Position numbers and translations under genes: made by a program
Shown here: piece after piece, positions 15,062 through 33,409 of the stretch
How positions within the stretch are numbered: the stretch's first letter is position 1
Layout: every line of letters starts with the position of its first letter
Notes under the pieces: model-generated
Databases searched by the model: none
Told to the model about the DNA's origin: nothing
What the model saw: only the letters and a program-made list of their open reading frames with translations
IMG/VR virus record: IMGVR_UViG_3300025121_000011
Span: 1-64,000 of that record
Direction: 5' to 3' (one strand)
Length of the DNA: 64,000 bases

Positions 15062-15326
15062 TAAATATTTATCACGAAGAATGGTGTGATAGATTTATTG
15101 TATAAATGTAATACTTATCAAGTTACCGAAGCATATTCGTGTTGAGATGTTATATTATTCAGATATATTACTCGGGCTTTCTAAATAACAATATATGTCA
15201 TTTTTTTCTTAGAAGGTGGACAAAAAAATGACATAATCACTGGATGCAGTATTTCTATGCAGATTAAAGAATGTAGAAATTTTTGCTAATGGTAGTAGGA
15301 TTTTTCATCAGTTATATAGGAGTGTT

Positions 15327-26113: not shown

Positions 26114-26491
26114 ATGACTGATTTAGATGATTGTTATATTTTAAGTAGAAATTTTCACATTAATAAATTCAGAGCATTATTTAATGTAACTATTTCGGTC
26201 ACAAAAAGTGATGAAACTGGTGAAGATATAAGTTCAGAAGATGTAAAGTATCAGGAAGAGATAGAATCAGCGAGAATTACTCAACAGAATCTTGAAGAAA
26301 ATTTATTTATTACCCAAGATGGTACAATAATTGGAATTAATCGTACGATAGCAGATCAATGGCTAACGGATTCTGATGTCCATGCTGTAAGATGGGGAAA
26401 TAAGAAAATACCAGATAAGCTGCTGATTTCTAAACCAGAAGATCTTTATAAGATGCTTTCTGCATTTATTCCATTGGATGAAACTGTTTAA
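26114..26491 (+). CDS. Hypothetical protein
   Basis: GGAG RBS; 125 aa. Confidence 0.65.
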   Translation: MTDLDDCYILSRNFHINKFRALFNVTISVTKSDETGEDISSEDVKYQEEIESARITQQNLEENLFITQDGTIIGINRTIADQWLTDSDVHAVRWGNKKIPDKLLISKPEDLYKMLSAFIPLDETV

Positions 26492-26520: not shown

Positions 26521-26550
26521 GGCCGCGATCATAAGTCGCGGCTATTTTTA
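26521..26550 (+). terminator. Intrinsic terminator
   Basis: GGCCGCGAT-cataa-GTCGCGGCT hairpin followed by ATTTTT. Confidence 0.8.
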
Positions 26551-28419: not shown

Positions 28420-30192
28420 ATGTTTGAAACGTCAAAGCTGCTTGCAAAGCTAGCTACAGAGTTGGATGAAAATGGGTATCTGGATTGGGCAGATCAAATC
28501 GATGATATAGAAAATATCACAACTGATGTAGATGTTGCCTCGGGGCAACACATGCCCGCTGGAGATGCACAATGGACACACCCAACTGTTTGTGCAAGTC
28601 TTAGTAAGAAGTCTATGGGACTTATGGATGTGCCAATTGGTGATTTGGATTATGCTAATAGACAGGGTATACCAGATGATGACATGGATAAGCAGTTATT
28701 TTCTGGAGAAGAAGACGGTGTATCTATGCCACCAATCAATAGAAAATATCATGAGGTAGATGATATGGAAATTCCACTTAAAAAGCTTGAAGAATATTTT
28801 AAATCTCATGGATTATATAAGCAGGCAAAAGACATTTCTGCAATCAGAATTGCTAATCTGGGTGGGCCAATAACTACAGGTGGGACTGCTGGAACTGTTG
28901 CCGGTGCTTCGGCTGGTACTGTCGGTGGATTAACAATTGGAACAGCTTTAGGAGTATTATTTCCACCTTTGTTACCAGTTTCAACTGTTTTAGGTTCTGT
29001 TATTGGAGCTTTTAGTGGTGGTATTGCCGGAAAATATACCGGAGAAGAGATTCAGGCAAAGATAAAAAAATATCTTGATGATAGGCCACCTCAAAAAGAA
29101 GAACTAATGAGAGTAACTAATCGACTTAGAGAGATTCGCAATACTTTAATTACTAAATATAAGTTAACAGAACCAGAAATTGAGTCAATCATTGCTGGCA
29201 GGGTAAATGTAAACTCTTTAATATCTAGTAAATTTCCGGGAAAAGATGAAAAGGAGCTTGTAGCGTTAATTTCAGAATATGATAAATTAGTTAAACGTTT
29301 CACACAAATAATTTCTGAAGGTCTTAAAGAAGAAACTAGTTCCGATTCTAAAGGCATCTCAGAAGGAGAACCCGTTAGTACTGGACGAATAGAAGAATCT
29401 AGTCCCGCTAAAACACGAGGAAATAATTCAGTTGCTAAATTGCAAAAACTTATTGGAGTGACTTCAGATGGTATTTGGGGGCCTGAGACATCCGAAGCGT
29501 GGAACAAATTTATAAATAATAATAAAGACGAGATTTTAAAAGAATTTCCTGAGGCCGATCTAGAAGCTACTAAGAATAATTGGCCCGCTGTTGCAAAATT
29601 TTATAAACTGACTCCAGATGCCATTGGTATTTTACAATTTGCTCAAGCAATTGTAAATACATCAGCAGAAGCACCAGCAGTAACACCAGAAGCAGTAACA
29701 CCAGAAGCAGTAACACCAGAAGCAGTAACACCAGAAGAAACACCGGCAATAACTTCAGATGAAGTTTTAAAGGCTCTCACAATGCTTTCTACTAGTGATG
29801 AGCCACATATGTCTGAGGGAAATGGTAAGACGGTAAAATCTCTTGACGGGGTTATTTCTAATAGACGTACTAATAGATATATTAGACACTTAGGTAAAGT
29901 TGCTGATGGAGATGGAAACGATATTCAAAATGTTGCAAATCTTATGGTTTCAAGATATGGAGATGCTATGCAGGCTGAGCTTCAAACAGCTAAAAAAACT
30001 CATGAAGCAACTGATATGCCGGATTATAATGCAAAACATAGGGCAGATCATTTGAATTATATTGTTTATAAGTATCTTCAGAGGGCTTGGGGAGCATTAA
30101 GTAAGAATCCCGAATCAAGCAGACGAGATGAGAGAGCGGCTAGACGAGAAAGAAAACAAGAAAATAGGGGACAGCGAAGATTAGCCCGATAA
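28420..30192 (+). CDS. Putative virion protein: leader motif, glycine-zipper TM region, peptidoglycan-binding-like motif
   Basis: LLAKLATELDENGYLDWADQID; GxxxG-rich hydrophobic region; VAKLQKLIGVTSDGIWGPETSEA resembles PG_binding_1. Confidence 0.75.
   Translation: MFETSKLLAKLATELDENGYLDWADQIDDIENITTDVDVASGQHMPAGDAQWTHPTVCASLSKKSMGLMDVPIGDLDYANRQGIPDDDMDKQLFSGEEDGVSMPPINRKYHEVDDMEIPLKKLEEYFKSHGLYKQAKDISAIRIANLGGPITTGGTAGTVAGASAGTVGGLTIGTALGVLFPPLLPVSTVLGSVIGAFSGGIAGKYTGEEIQAKIKKYLDDRPPQKEELMRVTNRLREIRNTLITKYKLTEPEIESIIAGRVNVNSLISSKFPGKDEKELVALISEYDKLVKRFTQIISEGLKEETSSDSKGISEGEPVSTGRIEESSPAKTRGNNSVAKLQKLIGVTSDGIWGPETSEAWNKFINNNKDEILKEFPEADLEATKNNWPAVAKFYKLTPDAIGILQFAQAIVNTSAEAPAVTPEAVTPEAVTPEAVTPEETPAITSDEVLKALTMLSTSDEPHMSEGNGKTVKSLDGVISNRRTNRYIRHLGKVADGDGNDIQNVANLMVSRYGDAMQAELQTAKKTHEATDMPDYNAKHRADHLNYIVYKYLQRAWGALSKNPESSRRDERAARRERKQENRGQRRLAR
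29677..29736 (+). repeat. 15-bp coding tandem repeat x4 (AVTPE)
   Basis: Four exact copies of GCAGTAACACCAGAA. Confidence 0.95.
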
Positions 30193-30273
30193 TTTATATC
30201 TAAAAATATTTACATATAAAAATTTTTCATATGGTAACTCCTTCATAAGTATCTTTAATTTCAAGGAGTTGAT

Positions 30274-30732
30274 ATGAGTAAATTGTCAAGATTGCATCCA
30301 ATGGCAATAGGTTTGTTAACCGTTAAGCGTACAGAGATACCTTTATCTGAATTTGTGATCTCTGCTTATACGATGATCGATCAACGATCAGAATCTTTAA
30401 CAGATAAGTGGATTAAAGATATAAATAGTTGGTGTGAAAAAATATTATTAGGTATGTCTCTTGGAAATGAATATTCTTTAAAAATTGGAGATATAATAAA
30501 TATTAAAGATGTTACTGTAATTAAGCGTCGAGCAAAGAAATATAAAACTTCGGGATATCCAGCCTTAATTACAAAAGATTTTTATGGTTGGAAATATTGG
30601 ATGATTTGTCCAAAAGCATTTGAATTTGCAGTTGGAGAGCGGGTTTCAATTACTGGAACTATCAGAGATATTAAAGATGGGATGGTCTTTTTGCGTCAAC
30701 CTAGTGATGTAATTTCTTTTAAAAATAAATAA
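30274..30732 (+). CDS. Hypothetical protein, possible OB-fold C-terminus
   Basis: AAGGAG RBS; FAVGERVSITGTIRDIKDGMVFL. Confidence 0.65.
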   Translation: MSKLSRLHPMAIGLLTVKRTEIPLSEFVISAYTMIDQRSESLTDKWIKDINSWCEKILLGMSLGNEYSLKIGDIINIKDVTVIKRRAKKYKTSGYPALITKDFYGWKYWMICPKAFEFAVGERVSITGTIRDIKDGMVFLRQPSDVISFKNK

Positions 30733-30736
30733 GTCT

Positions 30737-30804
30737 ATAATATTTTCTCCAGGTACATTCCTGGTGGCTCACGCGTTTGGCGTGTGTTCTGGAGAAAATA
30801 TTAT
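30737..30804 (+). promoter_or_regulatory. RBS-sequestering 16-bp inverted repeat with alternative hairpins upstream of purA
   Basis: ATAATATTTTCTCCAG(30737-52) is the perfect reverse complement of CTGGAGAAAATATTAT(30789-804), which holds the RBS and the AT of the ATG. Confidence 0.7.
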
Positions 30805-31804
30805 GATTGAATATGCTGATGTAGTATGTGGTGTATCTTTTGGTGACGAAGCAAAAGGTAAAGTAACTAGTTTTTTGGCTGCTACAGGTAATTATAATAT
30901 TGTAGCTAGGTTTGGCGGAGGAAATAACGCGGGCCATACAGTATATGTTGATGGTAAAAAATATAAGACGCATTTGGTTCCCTCTGGAGTGTTTCACGGA
31001 ATAACATCGGTTATTGGTCCGGGATGTGTTCTGCATCCAGAATCCTTTAATAAGGAATTGGAATACTTGTCAGAAAATGGATTTGATACATCTTTGGTAA
31101 AGGTTTCACCAAAATGTCATATTGTTCAGGAAAAGCATATTGAATTTGATAAGAAAAATTTATCTAATTTATTAGGTACAACTGCTCGTGGAATAGCACC
31201 GGTATATGCCGACAAGTATGCTAGAATAGGCATATTGGCTGAACAAGTTTTATCAGAAGAATTGTTGTGGCGTGATACTCTACATGGTAGAATATTATGT
31301 GAGGGGGCTCAAGGGATTTGGCTAGATATTGATTATGGTACATATCCATATGTAACTTCCAGTGTTACTCTTCCATATGCGGCTTGTAGTTTAGGATTTC
31401 CGCCTCAAAAGATTAGACATATTTGGGGAGCTGCTAAAGCGTATGATACTAGAAGTGGGGTAGATCCATTATTTCCAGAATCTTTATTAGATGATCCAAT
31501 CTTATTAAATATAGCTGATGCTGGATCAGAATATGGTGTAACAACAGGTCGTAGGCGTAAAGTCAATTGGTTAGATCTTGATCGCCTAATTAAGGCCGTT
31601 AATATAACTGGAACAACGCATATTGTAATAAGCAAATTTGATGTTTTAGAGATGGTAGGAGCTTTTAAATTATTTCGAAATAAACAGTTAATGGATTTTT
31701 GTTGTTTGTTGGATATGGAAGATTTCATTGATATAGAATTAGAAACGAATTGTCCACTTCTGGTTGAGCGACATCACGCATTTTCTCCAGAAACAATAGA
31801 TTAG
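30803..31804 (+). CDS. purA: Adenylosuccinate synthetase (short, 333 aa)
   Basis: FGDEAKGK, GGNNAGHT, GTTARGI, EGAQG, GTYPYVTSS, EYGVTTGRRR. Confidence 0.96.
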   Translation: MIEYADVVCGVSFGDEAKGKVTSFLAATGNYNIVARFGGGNNAGHTVYVDGKKYKTHLVPSGVFHGITSVIGPGCVLHPESFNKELEYLSENGFDTSLVKVSPKCHIVQEKHIEFDKKNLSNLLGTTARGIAPVYADKYARIGILAEQVLSEELLWRDTLHGRILCEGAQGIWLDIDYGTYPYVTSSVTLPYAACSLGFPPQKIRHIWGAAKAYDTRSGVDPLFPESLLDDPILLNIADAGSEYGVTTGRRRKVNWLDLDRLIKAVNITGTTHIVISKFDVLEMVGAFKLFRNKQLMDFCCLLDMEDFIDIELETNCPLLVERHHAFSPETID

Positions 31805-31810
31805 GTGATT

Positions 31811-32635
31811 ATGAAAGATATCGTTTTATTTTATCACGCAAAGTGCTCTGATGGATTTGGGGCAGCTTATGCTTTTTGGTGCAAGTTTAAAGATCAGATA
31901 TCATATGTGCCTTTAGAACATTTTAAACGCGTATATTTTGATATAGAGGCGTGTCGTGGAAAAACTGTTTTTATGGTTGATATTTCTCTTGATAGGGAAG
32001 CCATGTTAGCTCTTAAAAGGGTTGCAAAAGAGTTAATAGTCTTAGATCATCATAAGTCAGCTCAATTAGAAATCGGAGATCTTGATTTTTGCTTATTTGA
32101 TATGAATTCATCTGGAGCAATTTTAGCTTGGAATTATTTATTTAATACACCGGCCCCACTGTTGTTGCAGTGTGTACAAGATAGAGATTTGTGGAGTTGG
32201 AAAATTCCACATTCTGAAGAGATTCTTCTGTGTTGTGATTCTTTTGATAAGTCATTTGATAATTGGGATAAATTACGTAATGAATGTGATTCAGAATATG
32301 AGTTATTAAAAGTTATTGAGGCTGGAACAACAATTAAGAGATATGCTAAGAATATTCTTAATGATCTTTTTTCTCAAATATTTAAAACGAATATTAAAGG
32401 TTATTTTGTACCTATTATTAATACACCTTTATTTAGAAATGACATTATTTCTATTATGGCAAAAAATCAACCATTTGCAGCCGGATACCATTTTAATGGA
32501 GATTGTTATATTTTTTCTCTACGATCAGATTGTAATGGAATAGATGTATCTGAAATAGCCAGTTATTTTCCAGGTGGCGGAGGTCACTTTCACTCAGCTG
32601 GGTTCGTTGTGAGAACATTAGAAGAACTTAAATAA
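31811..32635 (+). CDS. DHH/DHHA1 phosphoesterase
   Basis: YH..CSDG, VD, LDHHKS, DRDLW, SLRS, GGGH..SAG. Confidence 0.88.
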   Translation: MKDIVLFYHAKCSDGFGAAYAFWCKFKDQISYVPLEHFKRVYFDIEACRGKTVFMVDISLDREAMLALKRVAKELIVLDHHKSAQLEIGDLDFCLFDMNSSGAILAWNYLFNTPAPLLLQCVQDRDLWSWKIPHSEEILLCCDSFDKSFDNWDKLRNECDSEYELLKVIEAGTTIKRYAKNILNDLFSQIFKTNIKGYFVPIINTPLFRNDIISIMAKNQPFAAGYHFNGDCYIFSLRSDCNGIDVSEIASYFPGGGGHFHSAGFVVRTLEELK

Positions 32636-32677
32636 TGTTATATCTTCTGGGTACAAAAAAATTACAGGAACTGAATT

Positions 32678-33409
32678 ATGGAATCAAATGAATTATATGA
32701 CAGATATACAAAAGCGGTGCAACAAGCTTGGCTTGTCAAGCATAATACAGAAGAGTTAATAAATTTATCATATGAAGATATTCGAATTCTAATTGAATTA
32801 GATACAAGTCTTGTTCAAAATATTGTTGAAATTTCTCAAGCTATTGCTAATCTTAATGATTGGCTTATTAATAAATTTTATTATTCTATAGCTCGGCAGC
32901 ATTTAGATAAAATAAGACAATGGGAAAAGAGTAGTTTAAATTTTGAGTTTTTAGCAAGTAGAGTGTATTTTTCGGAATATTATGATTTTGATATTTTTAA
33001 TAGATTAACATATAGCCCTCGGGCCACACATAGACTTCTTGGCATCAAGTTTTGTAATGAAGATGAGTTGTTAAAGTTATCAGAAGATGCAGACATTCGT
33101 GTTAGAAAAGAAGCCTTAATAAGACTGGGTTATAAAGCTTTAGATAGGATGTTAAAGGATTCTAGATGTGAAATTCGAGAGGCTGGAGTTATAATTTCTC
33201 CAATGGAGTATCCTGGGTTAATAGAAATGAAGGATGATTTGTCATTTAAGGTTGTTGCACATTTGGTGAGAAAAATAGATATTAAGGAGTTACCATATAT
33301 TTTAGGAAATAGAAATTTTAAAAAGAACAATAGAATTAGGAAAATTATTGAAGAACGAATGTCCATTAATGGAGCGCCACATGAAACTACAGAAAAGAAA
33401 GACATATAA
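32678..33409 (+). CDS. HEAT-like repeat protein with C-terminal motif B
   Basis: LSEDADIRVRKEAL / LKDSRCEIRE / KDDLSFKVV repeats; ends ELPYILGNR...IRKIIEERM. Confidence 0.7.
   Translation: MESNELYDRYTKAVQQAWLVKHNTEELINLSYEDIRILIELDTSLVQNIVEISQAIANLNDWLINKFYYSIARQHLDKIRQWEKSSLNFEFLASRVYFSEYYDFDIFNRLTYSPRATHRLLGIKFCNEDELLKLSEDADIRVRKEALIRLGYKALDRMLKDSRCEIREAGVIISPMEYPGLIEMKDDLSFKVVAHLVRKIDIKELPYILGNRNFKKNNRIRKIIEERMSINGAPHETTEKKDI

What the first reader, a model, noticed from the sequence alone, without database searches (positions are those of the whole stretch)
30737..30804. Two-state RNA switch candidate over the purA ribosome-binding site
Seen: the whole intergenic region is a perfect 16-bp inverted repeat that buries GGAGA and the AT of the start codon. 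The loop holds CCTGG (30760-64), which can instead pair with CCAGG (30749-53) of the left arm, plus CACGC/GCGTG (30770-84); this alternative fold would free the RBS. In addition, ATTTTCTCCAGAA at the purA 3' end (31780-92) is a 13-nt perfect complement of the RBS region. I do not recognise it as a known purine riboswitch. Inference: a ligand-, protein- or temperature-controlled translational switch on a phage purine gene, or a scar of how purA was acquired.
Basis: partly seen in the sequence, partly recalled or inferred. Interest (0 to 1): 0.65.

Follow-up and report, generated by a model that had tools for sequence, protein, structure and literature searches.

The report
Hairpin locking the phage purA start
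A very stable RNA hairpin found only in this 335-kb groundwater phage buries the ribosome-binding site and start codon of its purA gene, so it is an ordinary translational lock of the kind known from phage T4, not a metabolite- or temperature-sensing switch.

Summary
A perfect 16-bp inverted repeat (30737-52 / 30789-804) fills the 70-nt gap between an OB-fold gene (p152) and purA. As RNA it extends to about 21 bp and pairs GGAG and the whole AUG.

It is the most occluded of 321 gene starts in the genome, and simulated genomes never give a perfect repeat this long.

The "two-state switch" reading is not supported:
- The alternative fold exists but is 14.4 kcal/mol less stable, with a barrier of only about 4 kcal/mol.
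- The helix stays closed to 70 C.
- Rfam finds nothing.
- 80 other purA loci lack the hairpin.
- Every assembly of this phage is identical, so covariation cannot be tested.

The right arm is the ancestral ribosome-binding site; the left arm and the GC-rich loop are lineage-specific. They lie at a junction where relatives carry extra genes, including a TnsA-like endonuclease.

Most likely it is a cis translational lock. RNAs carrying the left arm are silent, and RNAs with a 5' end near 30748 are open, as in T4 e/soc/49/I-TevI. How the lock is opened is inferred, not shown.

The 13-nt match at the purA 3' end is mostly a conserved ..SPE.. codon motif (empirical p about 0.03).

Ordinary kind, extreme example; moderate-to-low interest.

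The parts
30274..30732 (+). Upstream gene p152 (152 aa). It has an N-terminal helical part and a C-terminal OB fold. It is the conserved partner of purA in many phages.
   Evidence: ORF list. No Pfam, PHROG or NCBIfam hit. The AlphaFold model (pLDDT 75) matches RPA, SSB, telomere-end-binding, HIN and aaRS OB folds (Foldseek prob ~1, E ~1e-3; Atlas). Synteny with purA.
30730..30732 (+). UAA stop of p152. Its last base is the first paired base of the extended helix.
30736..30741 (+). TATAAT hexamer inside or at the foot of the left arm. It is a possible -10 element that would place a 5' end near 30747-30750. There is no -35 and no TGn.
   Evidence: Sequence. Not called by the promoter scan, and sigma-70-like sites are not enriched (57 found against 70 expected). 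TATAAT is not enriched in intergenic DNA. Five of the six bases follow automatically from complementarity to the ancestral spacer ATTAT.
30737..30752 (+). Left arm: the anti-RBS and anti-start strand. This is the lineage-specific (derived) half.
   Evidence: No counterpart in relatives.
30753..30788 (+). 36-nt GC-rich interior (about 58% GC in a 34% GC genome). It holds two small helices: CCAGG/CCUGG (30749-53 / 30760-64, shared with the left arm) and CACGC/GCGUG (30770-74 / 30780-84).
   Evidence: Unique in the genome and absent from viral and prokaryote genome collections.
30764..30766 (+). In-frame GTG in the loop, which automatic gene callers used as the start (346-aa product). It is not the conserved N-terminus.
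   Evidence: Homologues begin at MIEYADVV / MIDYADVV, which aligns with ATG 30803.
30789..30804 (+). Right arm: Shine-Dalgarno GGAG (30791-94), the spacer, and AU of the start codon. This is the ancestral ribosome-binding region.
   Evidence: L120 has TTGGAGAAATGATATG and L030 has AATATTATGATTGAATA at the same place.
30803..31804 (+). purA: a short (333 aa) adenylosuccinate-synthetase-like gene.
   Evidence: Pfam PF00709 6.7e-83. PDB PurA chains 2e-60, PurZ chains only 5.6e-13. NCBIfam PurZ 94 bits against a cut-off of 300.
31780..31792 (+). 13-nt copy of the inner left arm (complement of 30787-99). It lies in codons for the conserved C-terminal motif F/Y-S-x-S-P-E-x-I. It is probably coincidental.
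30227..30277 (+). A second, imperfect lock of the same design on p152 itself. UCAUAU..AACUCCUU pairs with AAGGAGUU..AUAUGA (SD plus AUG).
   Evidence: It is the third least accessible of 321 starts (0.17).

Best explanation
The element is a cis-acting translational lock on purA.

Shown:
- Any RNA that contains 30732-30808 folds into a ~21-bp helix that pairs the Shine-Dalgarno sequence, the spacer and the AUG.
- The helix is too stable (14 kcal/mol above the open state, closed up to 70 C) and too quickly re-formed to be flipped by a metabolite or by temperature.
- Read-through transcripts from p152 should therefore be essentially untranslatable at purA.

Inferred from comparison:
- The right arm is the old ribosome-binding site.
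- The left arm is a new, exact inverted copy of it. It probably arose in one step by an inverted duplication or template switch, at a junction that is repeatedly rearranged in relatives.

Inferred mechanism of opening:
- PurA is made from RNA molecules that lack the 5' half of the left arm. These would be transcripts started about 7 nt after the TATAAT in the left arm, or products of endonucleolytic processing there.
- This is the design of phage T4 genes e, soc, 49 and I-TevI: long early RNAs are silent and short RNAs are active.
For: Structure and extremeness.

Energetics:
- Closed -37.4 against RBS-free -23.0 kcal/mol.
- Unpaired fraction of 30788-30805 stays between 0.01 and 0.09 from 10 to 70 C.
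- For 5' ends at 30737 / 30745 / 30748, the unpaired fraction is 0.08 / 0.51 / 0.83.
- The barrier from the open to the closed fold is 4.1 kcal/mol.

A perfect TATAAT sits at 30736-41, positioned so that a start would fall at 30747-50.

The right arm is ancestral and the left arm is not.

The neighbouring gene p152 has the same kind of SD+AUG-pairing inverted repeat, in imperfect form. Two of the three most occluded starts of the genome are therefore adjacent, which argues for design rather than accident.

The element is fixed and identical in independent assemblies from six studies, and purA is intact.

One-step birth of perfect stems by template switching is documented (PMC8794818).
Against: - No transcript data exist. 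No public run holding this phage is on record as RNA, so no 5' end is known.
- The TATAAT has no -35 or TGn and was not called by the promoter scan. Such hexamers are not enriched in this genome's intergenic DNA.
- Five of the six TATAAT bases are forced by complementarity to the spacer.
- The only enriched upstream motif found (TACTAATT) is absent here.
- There is no conservation in any relative and no sequence variation within the phage, so selection on the pairing cannot be shown.
- The perfect arms are equally what a recent neutral or harmful duplication would look like.
Confidence: 0.4

Rival explanations
1. Attenuated translational coupling. The hairpin makes purA translation low and dependent on ribosomes that finish p152. 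A ribosome at the UAA melts the foot of the helix, exposes the AUG and lets a small fraction of ribosomes start. This sets a high p152 : low PurA ratio and may also shield the 3' end of the upstream RNA.
For: In 13 more distant relatives the p152 stop and the purA start overlap (-8, -4, -1) or lie 39 nt or less apart, so coupling is the ancestral arrangement.

Here the stop is 5 nt before the left arm, and its last base is in the helix.

Blocking the RNA up to 30738-44, the reach of a terminating ribosome, gives an AUG that is at least 0.97 unpaired.

The RNA-unfolding model of coupling, with phage examples, is reviewed in PMC12548453.
Against: With the same block the SD stays 0.00-0.01 unpaired. 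It opens only if the block reaches 30748.

The start is 73 nt downstream in sequence, behind an 11-13-bp helix that a non-translocating ribosome cannot unwind.

The similar lock on p152 begins 34 nt after the preceding stop, so it cannot be opened this way.
Confidence: 0.2
2. A non-adaptive accident. A recent inverted duplication (template switch) or deletion scar at a hypervariable junction happens to silence purA, and there is no regulated opening.
For: - The arms are perfect.
- The structure is unique to one clonal population.
- It is absent from all 80 other loci.
- The junction between p152 and purA holds 0-2 extra genes or a reverse-strand TnsA-like endonuclease gene in the nearest relatives.
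- The genome has an excess of perfect repeats in general: 7 with arms of 14 bp or more, against 0-1 simulated. This fits an active repeat-generating process.
Against: - purA is intact over 333 codons.
- The element is fixed in samples from six studies.
- The adjacent gene carries an older-looking, imperfect version of the same design.
- A 14 kcal/mol block on a conserved metabolic gene should be selected against unless it is tolerated or used.
Confidence: 0.2
3. A double-strand-specific RNase (RNase III-type) processing or stability site that separates the p152 and purA messages, as in T7 and lambda.
For: The helix is about 21 bp with a single bulge, roughly two turns, which is the usual minimum for RNase III (general knowledge).

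Other long perfect intergenic hairpins exist in this genome, at 116326-406 and 191881-930.
Against: A cut in mid-stem would remove or split the SD from purA, so it would inactivate rather than activate.

The host and its RNases are unknown, and there are no RNA data.
Confidence: 0.08
4. One reading: a ligand-, protein- or temperature-controlled two-state riboswitch or thermometer.
For: Two mutually exclusive pairings for CCAGG exist, and the alternative would free the ribosome-binding site.

An OB-fold (nucleic-acid-binding type) protein is encoded immediately upstream.
Against: - A 14.4 kcal/mol gap and a ~4 kcal/mol barrier.
- Closed to 70 C, while the habitat is cold groundwater.
- No Rfam family.
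- No conserved loop or junction, and not present in any relative.
- p152 is paired with purA in many phages that have no hairpin.
Confidence: 0.04
5. A DNA-level element: a protein-binding palindrome, a recombination or cruciform site, or an intrinsic terminator.
For: A perfect repeat at a recombination-prone junction.
Against: - The arms are 36 bp apart, which is unusual for a dimer operator.
- It is a single copy in the genome.
- No U-tract follows on the + strand (AUUAUGAUUG), whereas the phage does use canonical terminators, for example at 26521-43.
- There are no minus-strand genes nearby.
Confidence: 0.05

Closest known systems
Inhibitory start-region hairpins of phage T4 genes e, soc, 49, I-TevI (and mobE of Aeh1)
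   Same: The SD and/or AUG are paired with an upstream complementary strand, so long read-through RNAs are silent. RNAs that begin inside or after the 5' strand are translated. A -10-like hexamer lies in the DNA that encodes the 5' strand (PMC3014915).
   Different: No promoter is verified, and no T4-type late motif (TATAAATA) lies in the right place. The stem is longer and perfect, with a large GC-rich interior. The regulated gene is a purine enzyme rather than a lysis, decoration or endonuclease gene. It is not conserved among relatives.
Translational coupling by RNA unfolding (f1 genes VII-IX, MS2 coat-lysis/replicase, rpmI-rplT)
   Same: The downstream start is silenced by structure, and the upstream stop is placed so that the terminating ribosome disturbs that structure (PMC12548453).
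   Different: Here the ribosome can reach only the foot of the helix, so the AUG is freed but the SD is not. The stop-to-start spacing is 70 nt, far beyond the usual coupling range.
Purine-pathway riboswitches (purine, ZTP, PRPP/ppGpp, 2'-dG, xanthine classes in Rfam)
   Same: It lies in the 5' leader of a purine gene and has a possible alternative pairing.
   Different: There is no aptamer match, no conservation, and no near-isoenergetic states.
RNA thermometers (ROSE, fourU)
   Same: The SD and AUG are paired in a hairpin.
   Different: Thermometers have short, mismatched stems that melt at 30-42 C. This one is perfect and stays closed to 70 C.
Hairpins created by template switching in replication
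   Same: A long perfect stem appears in one lineage next to a pre-existing sequence that serves as the template (PMC8794818).
   Different: No ancestral sequence is available to reconstruct the event, so this concerns origin only, not function.

Membership tests
Riboswitch (any Rfam class) | Match to a curated aptamer model | tested here: not met
   cmscan at E up to 10 on 29500-32500. The only hits were SpF22 sRNA (25.7 bits against gathering 55) and mir-4504 (24 bits against 104). Both reflect a generic hairpin.
Riboswitch (any Rfam class) | Conserved ligand-binding core with covariation across relatives | tested here: not met
   81 distinct purA start regions were compared and only this phage has the structure. 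All assemblies of this phage are identical, so no covariation data exist.
Riboswitch / two-state switch | Two alternative folds close enough in energy, or kinetically separated, for a ligand to decide between them | tested here: not met
   Gap 14.4 kcal/mol; direct-path barrier 4.1 kcal/mol from open to closed.
RNA thermometer | SD/AUG helix melts within the physiological temperature range | tested here: not met
   Unpaired fraction of SD-AUG is 0.011 at 10 C, 0.023 at 37 C and 0.093 at 70 C.
T4-type start-region lock (e, soc, 49, I-TevI) | SD and/or AUG sequestered in a helix with an upstream strand | tested here: met
T4-type start-region lock | RNA lacking the 5' strand has an open start region | tested here: met
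   In silico only: a 5' end at 30748 gives 0.83 unpaired.
T4-type start-region lock | A promoter in the DNA that encodes the 5' strand, active at a different time from the upstream promoter | tested here: inconclusive
   TATAAT is at 30736-41, but there is no -35 or TGn, it was not called by the scan, the hexamer is not enriched in intergenic DNA, and this phage's promoter consensus is unknown.
T4-type start-region lock | Mapped short and long transcripts with different translatability | not testable with these tools
   No listed run that holds the phage is on record as RNA.
Translational coupling by RNA unfolding | The upstream ribosome reaches and opens the inhibitory structure | tested here: inconclusive
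   With a block to 30738-44 the AUG is open (at least 0.97) and the SD is closed (at most 0.01).
Intrinsic terminator | GC-rich hairpin followed directly by a U-tract | tested here: not met
   The tail is AUUAUGAUUG and it was not listed by the terminator scan, which does find a canonical site at 26521-43.
RNase III processing site | About 20 bp or more of near-continuous duplex | tested here: met
   4 + 17 bp with one bulged U. Cleavage itself is not testable here.
Repeated intergenic cassette (PeSL / REP / MITE-like) | Several copies in the genome or in other genomes | tested here: not met
   Arms and loop are single-copy in the 335-kb genome. There are no exact matches in viral or prokaryote genome collections.

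The most novel reading that the evidence does not exclude
The hairpin works as a bacterial 'shunt'. It places the p152 stop and the purA AUG side by side at the foot of one helix, so a ribosome that terminates at the UAA and melts the foot is handed the AUG across a 70-nt structured spacer. This would restore the overlap-type coupling seen in relatives without linear scanning and without a free Shine-Dalgarno sequence. It would be one of several independent translation-level gates on purA in this phage clade. The others are the stop-plus-GC-hairpin inserts in the P-loop codons of relatives' purA.
Probability: 0.07. Interest if true: 0.75.

Novelty: new member of a known kind. Interest (0 to 1): 0.3.

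Why it matters
If the lock is functional, an uncultivated jumbo phage times or throttles a purine-nucleotide enzyme at the level of translation, using the device T4 uses for lysis and endonuclease genes. It would also be a clean natural example of a regulatory hairpin born in one step from an existing ribosome-binding site. In practice, it warns annotators that the database start (GTG 30764) is wrong. It also shows that an eye-catching alternative pairing does not make a riboswitch.

The comparison made to test the finding turned up something of wider interest in the relatives. Short stop-containing GC hairpins interrupt purA next to an endonuclease gene. This resembles the T4 gene 60 bypass cassette.

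Tried and rejected
- Rfam at a permissive threshold gave only chance hits.
- Similar DNA in the phage collection: none.
- Exact-pattern scans for the whole hairpin and for the loop in viral contigs and prokaryote genomes: none.
- Covariation failed for lack of variation. L035 and L114-L117 are identical over the element, and L114 differs only by a 30-nt gap in the 590-aa gene. Contigs of four runs showed no differences.
- RNA evidence: none of the 12 runs is on record as RNA, so starts and ends could not be read.
- Promoter discovery:
  - Sigma-70-like sites are not above shuffles.
  - ATAAATA-type enrichment is explained by stop codons and AT-rich spacers.
  - TACTAATT is enriched 20-35 nt before several starts but is absent here.
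- The 13-mer as a long-range partner or acquisition scar was rejected as the main reading. It has p about 0.026, and the motif TTCTCCNGA(A/G) is conserved coding sequence in all homologues.
- PurZ (2-aminoadenine pathway) identity of the gene was rejected. PurA chains score 2e-60 against 5.6e-13 for PurZ, and the PurZ model scores 94 bits against a cut-off of 300.
- One search was a mistaken trivial fold and carries no information.

Full report
**Context.** The window is the first 64 kb of a 335,169-bp virus record with direct terminal repeats. GC is 34%. A crude gene call gives 321 genes, 309 of them on the + strand. The same phage occurs, base for base, in assemblies and contigs from groundwater and soil metagenomes of six studies.

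**The observation.** The upstream ORF (p152, 30274-30732) ends in TAA at 30730-32, and purA begins at ATG 30803.

- Between them lie ATAATATTTTCTCCAG (30737-52) and its exact complement (30789-804), separated by 36 nt.
- As RNA the helix grows to 17 bp (G30753-U30788). After bulged U30736 it gains four more pairs (30732-35 with 30805-08). GGAG, the spacer and the complete AUG are therefore paired, and the last base of the upstream stop is in the helix.
- The MFE of 106 nt is -37.4 kcal/mol, against -19.2 +/- 2.9 for shuffles (z -6.4).
- Each of the 321 gene starts was folded over -80..+30. purA ranks first for stability (mean -16.0, sd 4.7) and first for occlusion of -15..+3 (0.023 unpaired; mean 0.46, first percentile 0.17).
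- Perfect inverted repeats with arms of 16 bp or more and loops of 80 nt or less number three in the genome. Ten Markov-chain genomes gave a longest arm of 12-14 bp.
- The feature is real and non-random. Because it is found in independent assemblies, it is not an assembly artefact.

When the right arm is forced single-stranded, the predicted fold is exactly CCAGG/CCUGG plus CACGC/GCGUG.

- That state is 14.4 kcal/mol less stable than the closed one.
- It does not use the 5' twelve bases of the left arm, so those bases can nucleate on the right arm. The best direct path from open to closed has a barrier of only 4.1 kcal/mol.
- A metabolite cannot pay 14 kcal/mol, and there is no kinetic trap to hold.
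- The helix does not melt in any plausible range: unpaired fraction 0.011 at 10 C and 0.093 at 70 C.
- Rfam gives nothing meaningful.
- I therefore reject the riboswitch and thermometer readings.

**Comparative evidence.**

- purA homologues were fetched from viral and metagenome collections, giving 113 loci. There are 81 distinct start regions including the phage's own.
- Only this phage has an occluded start. The median accessibility of the others is 0.47, the same as the genome background.
- The nearest relatives are only about 70-73% identical in PurA. Nothing lies between 73% and 100%, so covariation cannot be tested.
- The gene order [~600 aa]-p152-purA-DHH phosphoesterase-p243-...-IMPDH is shared.
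- In 13 more distant relatives, p152 and purA overlap by 8, 4 or 1 nt or lie 39 nt or less apart. In the nearest relatives, 341-1016 nt of extra material separates them.
  - The extra material is one or two small ORFs, or a reverse-strand gene with a TnsA-like endonuclease domain.
- So purA was not acquired at this spot, but the spot is a hot spot of insertion and loss.
- The bases just before the ATG match relatives: TTGGAGAAATGAT-ATG in L120 and AATATT-ATG in L030. The right arm is therefore the ancestral ribosome-binding site.
- The left arm and the GC-rich interior have no counterpart anywhere.
- A perfect copy of an existing sequence in inverted orientation is what a single template-switch event produces (PMC8794818). 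This is inference about origin.

**The 13-mer.** ATTTTCTCCAGAA at 31780-92 is the only other exact copy in the genome.

- It encodes ..F-S-P-E.. of the C-terminal motif (F/Y)S-x-SPE-x-I, which ends every homologue, and TTCTCCNGAR is present in all of them.
- Matches of 13 nt or more between a 68-nt segment and the next 1.1 kb occur in 2.6% of random placements in this genome.
- A 13-bp long-range duplex cannot compete with the local helix.
- I regard it as a coincidence between an anti-SD-like Ser-Pro codon pair and the SD, lengthened by chance.

**How it probably works.**

- Shown: RNAs that contain the left arm cannot expose the purA start.
- Computed: a 5' end at 30737 leaves it closed (0.08), at 30745 half open (0.51) and at 30748 open (0.83).
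- A ribosome parked on the p152 stop (RNA blocked to 30738-44) frees the AUG (at least 0.97) but not the SD (at most 0.01). The SD opens only when the block reaches 30748.
- The simplest physical route to expression is therefore an RNA whose 5' end lies at about 30745-30750.
- A perfect TATAAT at 30736-41 would put a start there. This is the arrangement of T4 genes e, soc, 49 and I-TevI.
  - In T4, long early RNAs are about 100-fold repressed.
  - There the late promoter lies in the DNA that encodes the 5' strand (PMC3014915).
- The promoter evidence is weak: there is no -35, five of the six bases are forced by complementarity, and neither sigma-70-like sites nor TATAAT are enriched.
- p152 has the same design in imperfect form, with UCAUAU..AACUCCUU pairing AAGGAGUU..AUAUGA at 30227-77. 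It is the third most occluded start in the genome. Its left strand begins 34 nt after the preceding stop, out of reach of a terminating ribosome.
  - Two adjacent genes with start-region locks argue for function.
  - They also argue, mildly, against coupling as the common key.
- My rough weights:

| Reading | Weight |
|---|---|
| T4-type or processing-dependent lock | 0.40 |
| Attenuated coupling | 0.20 |
| Recent accident that silences purA | 0.20 |
| RNase III-type site | 0.08 |
| DNA-level site or terminator | 0.05 |
| Ligand, temperature or protein switch | 0.04 |

**The genes.**

- PurA here is a short (333 aa) form. It is closer to bacterial PurA (2e-60) than to PurZ (5.6e-13; PurZ model 94 bits against a cut-off of 300).
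- Database gene calls start it at GTG 30764 in the loop (346 aa). Homologues show that ATG 30803 is the conserved N-terminus.
- p152 models as a helical N-terminal part plus an OB fold, and it resembles RPA, SSB and anticodon-binding domains. It accompanies purA in phages without the hairpin, so it is not a dedicated hairpin regulator.

**Side finding in relatives.** In five distinct lineages, the purA P-loop codons TGG GGT | GA(C/T) GAA GC. AAA GG are interrupted directly after GGT.

| Locus | Insert length |
|---|---|
| L124 | 9 nt |
| L118/L119 | 11 nt |
| L001/L032 | 12 nt |
| L031 | 13 nt |
| L122/L123 | 29 nt |

- Each insert begins with TAA or TGA. In the four shorter inserts a GGGG...CCCC mini-hairpin has the stop in its loop; the 29-nt insert instead folds as GACCC-UUCG-GGGUU.
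- Three of the five inserts end in a Gly codon (GGC or GGA).
- The lengths fall in all three frames, so no single frameshift or readthrough restores the protein. Only skipping the insert would.
- The downstream 318 codons are intact and under strong constraint. For L118 against L124, pN is 0.14 and pS is 0.87.
- In L118/L119 and L031 an intact TnsA-like/DUF7487 endonuclease gene lies just upstream on the other strand. L124/L125 and L127 keep remnants of it.
- This parallels the T4 gene 60 bypass cassette, which protects against its homing endonuclease (bioRxiv 10.1101/2022.08.31.505936, which does not mention purA).
- It is not part of the window, and I did not pursue it further.

**Verdict.** This is an extreme but conceptually ordinary ribosome-binding-site lock, specific to one phage lineage. 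The way it is opened is unproven. It is a new member of a known kind; interest 0.3.

Noticed in passing
L118:2502-2525, L119:2502-2525, L124:1719-1740, L122:2409-2445, L123:3269-3305, L001:3037-3057, L032:3037-3057, L031:3000-3021: In relatives' purA, the P-loop codons are interrupted right after TGG GGT by inserts of 9, 11, 12, 13 or 29 nt. Each insert starts with an in-frame TAA or TGA. The four shorter ones form a GGGG..CCCC mini-hairpin, and the 29-nt one folds as GACCC-UUCG-GGGUU. Three of the five end in a Gly codon. The insert lengths cover all three frames, yet the downstream 318 codons are intact and constrained (pN 0.14, pS 0.87). This looks like a programmed bypass (T4 gene 60 / mitochondrial byp type) or another excision mechanism. 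The window's own purA has no insert.
   Followed up: partly
L118:1516-2385 (- strand), L031:2041-2874, remnants L124:1450-1617, L125:1515-1682, L127:1581-1658: A 289-aa gene with DUF7487 and TnsA-like endonuclease N-domain hits sits between p152 and purA on the opposite strand. It occurs in lineages that also carry the purA mini-insert, and remnants survive in others. This is a likely free-standing homing endonuclease. By analogy with mobA/gene 60, the insert may give immunity to it.
   Followed up: partly
window 30227-30277: The start of p152 is itself buried in an imperfect inverted repeat (UCAUAU..AACUCCUU / AAGGAGUU..AUAUGA) that pairs the SD and the AUG. It is the third least accessible of 321 starts. 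It is not obviously conserved in L118, L120 or L122.
   Followed up: partly
window 30274-33409 and loci L002, L014, L037, L038, L048, L118, L120, L122: There is a conserved module: OB-fold protein p152, short PurA, DHH/DHHA1 phosphoesterase, p243, then two small ORFs (about 59 and 190 aa) and an IMPDH-like gene in close relatives. In many phages the p152 stop and the purA start overlap. The joint function of an OB-fold protein with PurA and a RecJ-like phosphoesterase is unexplained.
   Followed up: partly
window 30803-31804: The PHROG label for this family is '2-aminooxy adenylosuccinate synthetase' (PurZ-like), but the protein scores far better against bacterial PurA than against PurZ structures or the NCBIfam PurZ model. 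Thousands of short (about 330 aa) homologues occur in marine phage and giant-virus bins.
   Followed up: yes
window 15194-15235; genome G000:C1 116326-116406, 191881-191930, 283432-283533, 305496-305532, 332515-332609: The genome has an excess of long perfect inverted repeats (7 with arms of 14 bp or more, against 0-1 in simulations).
- 116326-406 is another 16-bp-arm intergenic hairpin with a GC-richer interior.
- 191881-930 holds the SD and ATG of the next gene in its loop.
- 283432-533 is a ~100-nt, -50 kcal/mol hairpin in apparently non-coding DNA.
   Followed up: partly
window 583, 1137, 1718, 2293, 19383, 19997; genome 295653, 296150, 296704, 335059: At least ten copies of a ~100-nt highly similar segment, spaced about 500-600 bp apart within each of several clusters near both genome ends, indicate a paralogous gene family. 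Part of it lies in the terminal repeat.
   Followed up: no
window 4821 and 17563 (- strand); genome 77261, 102212, 231267, 234649, 315492: The octamer TACTAATT is enriched in upstream regions (8 seen against 0.6 expected). It sits about 20-35 nt before several start codons. It is a candidate promoter element of this phage, and it is absent from the purA leader.
   Followed up: partly
window 26521-26543: A canonical intrinsic terminator (9-bp GC-rich stem plus a T-run) follows the gene that ends at 26491. This shows that the phage uses ordinary terminators.
   Followed up: no
window 28420-30192 (L114:1-1429): One 333-kb assembly of the same phage differs only by a 30-nt in-frame deletion in the 590-aa tail-lysin / tape-measure-like gene (580 aa there).
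   Followed up: no
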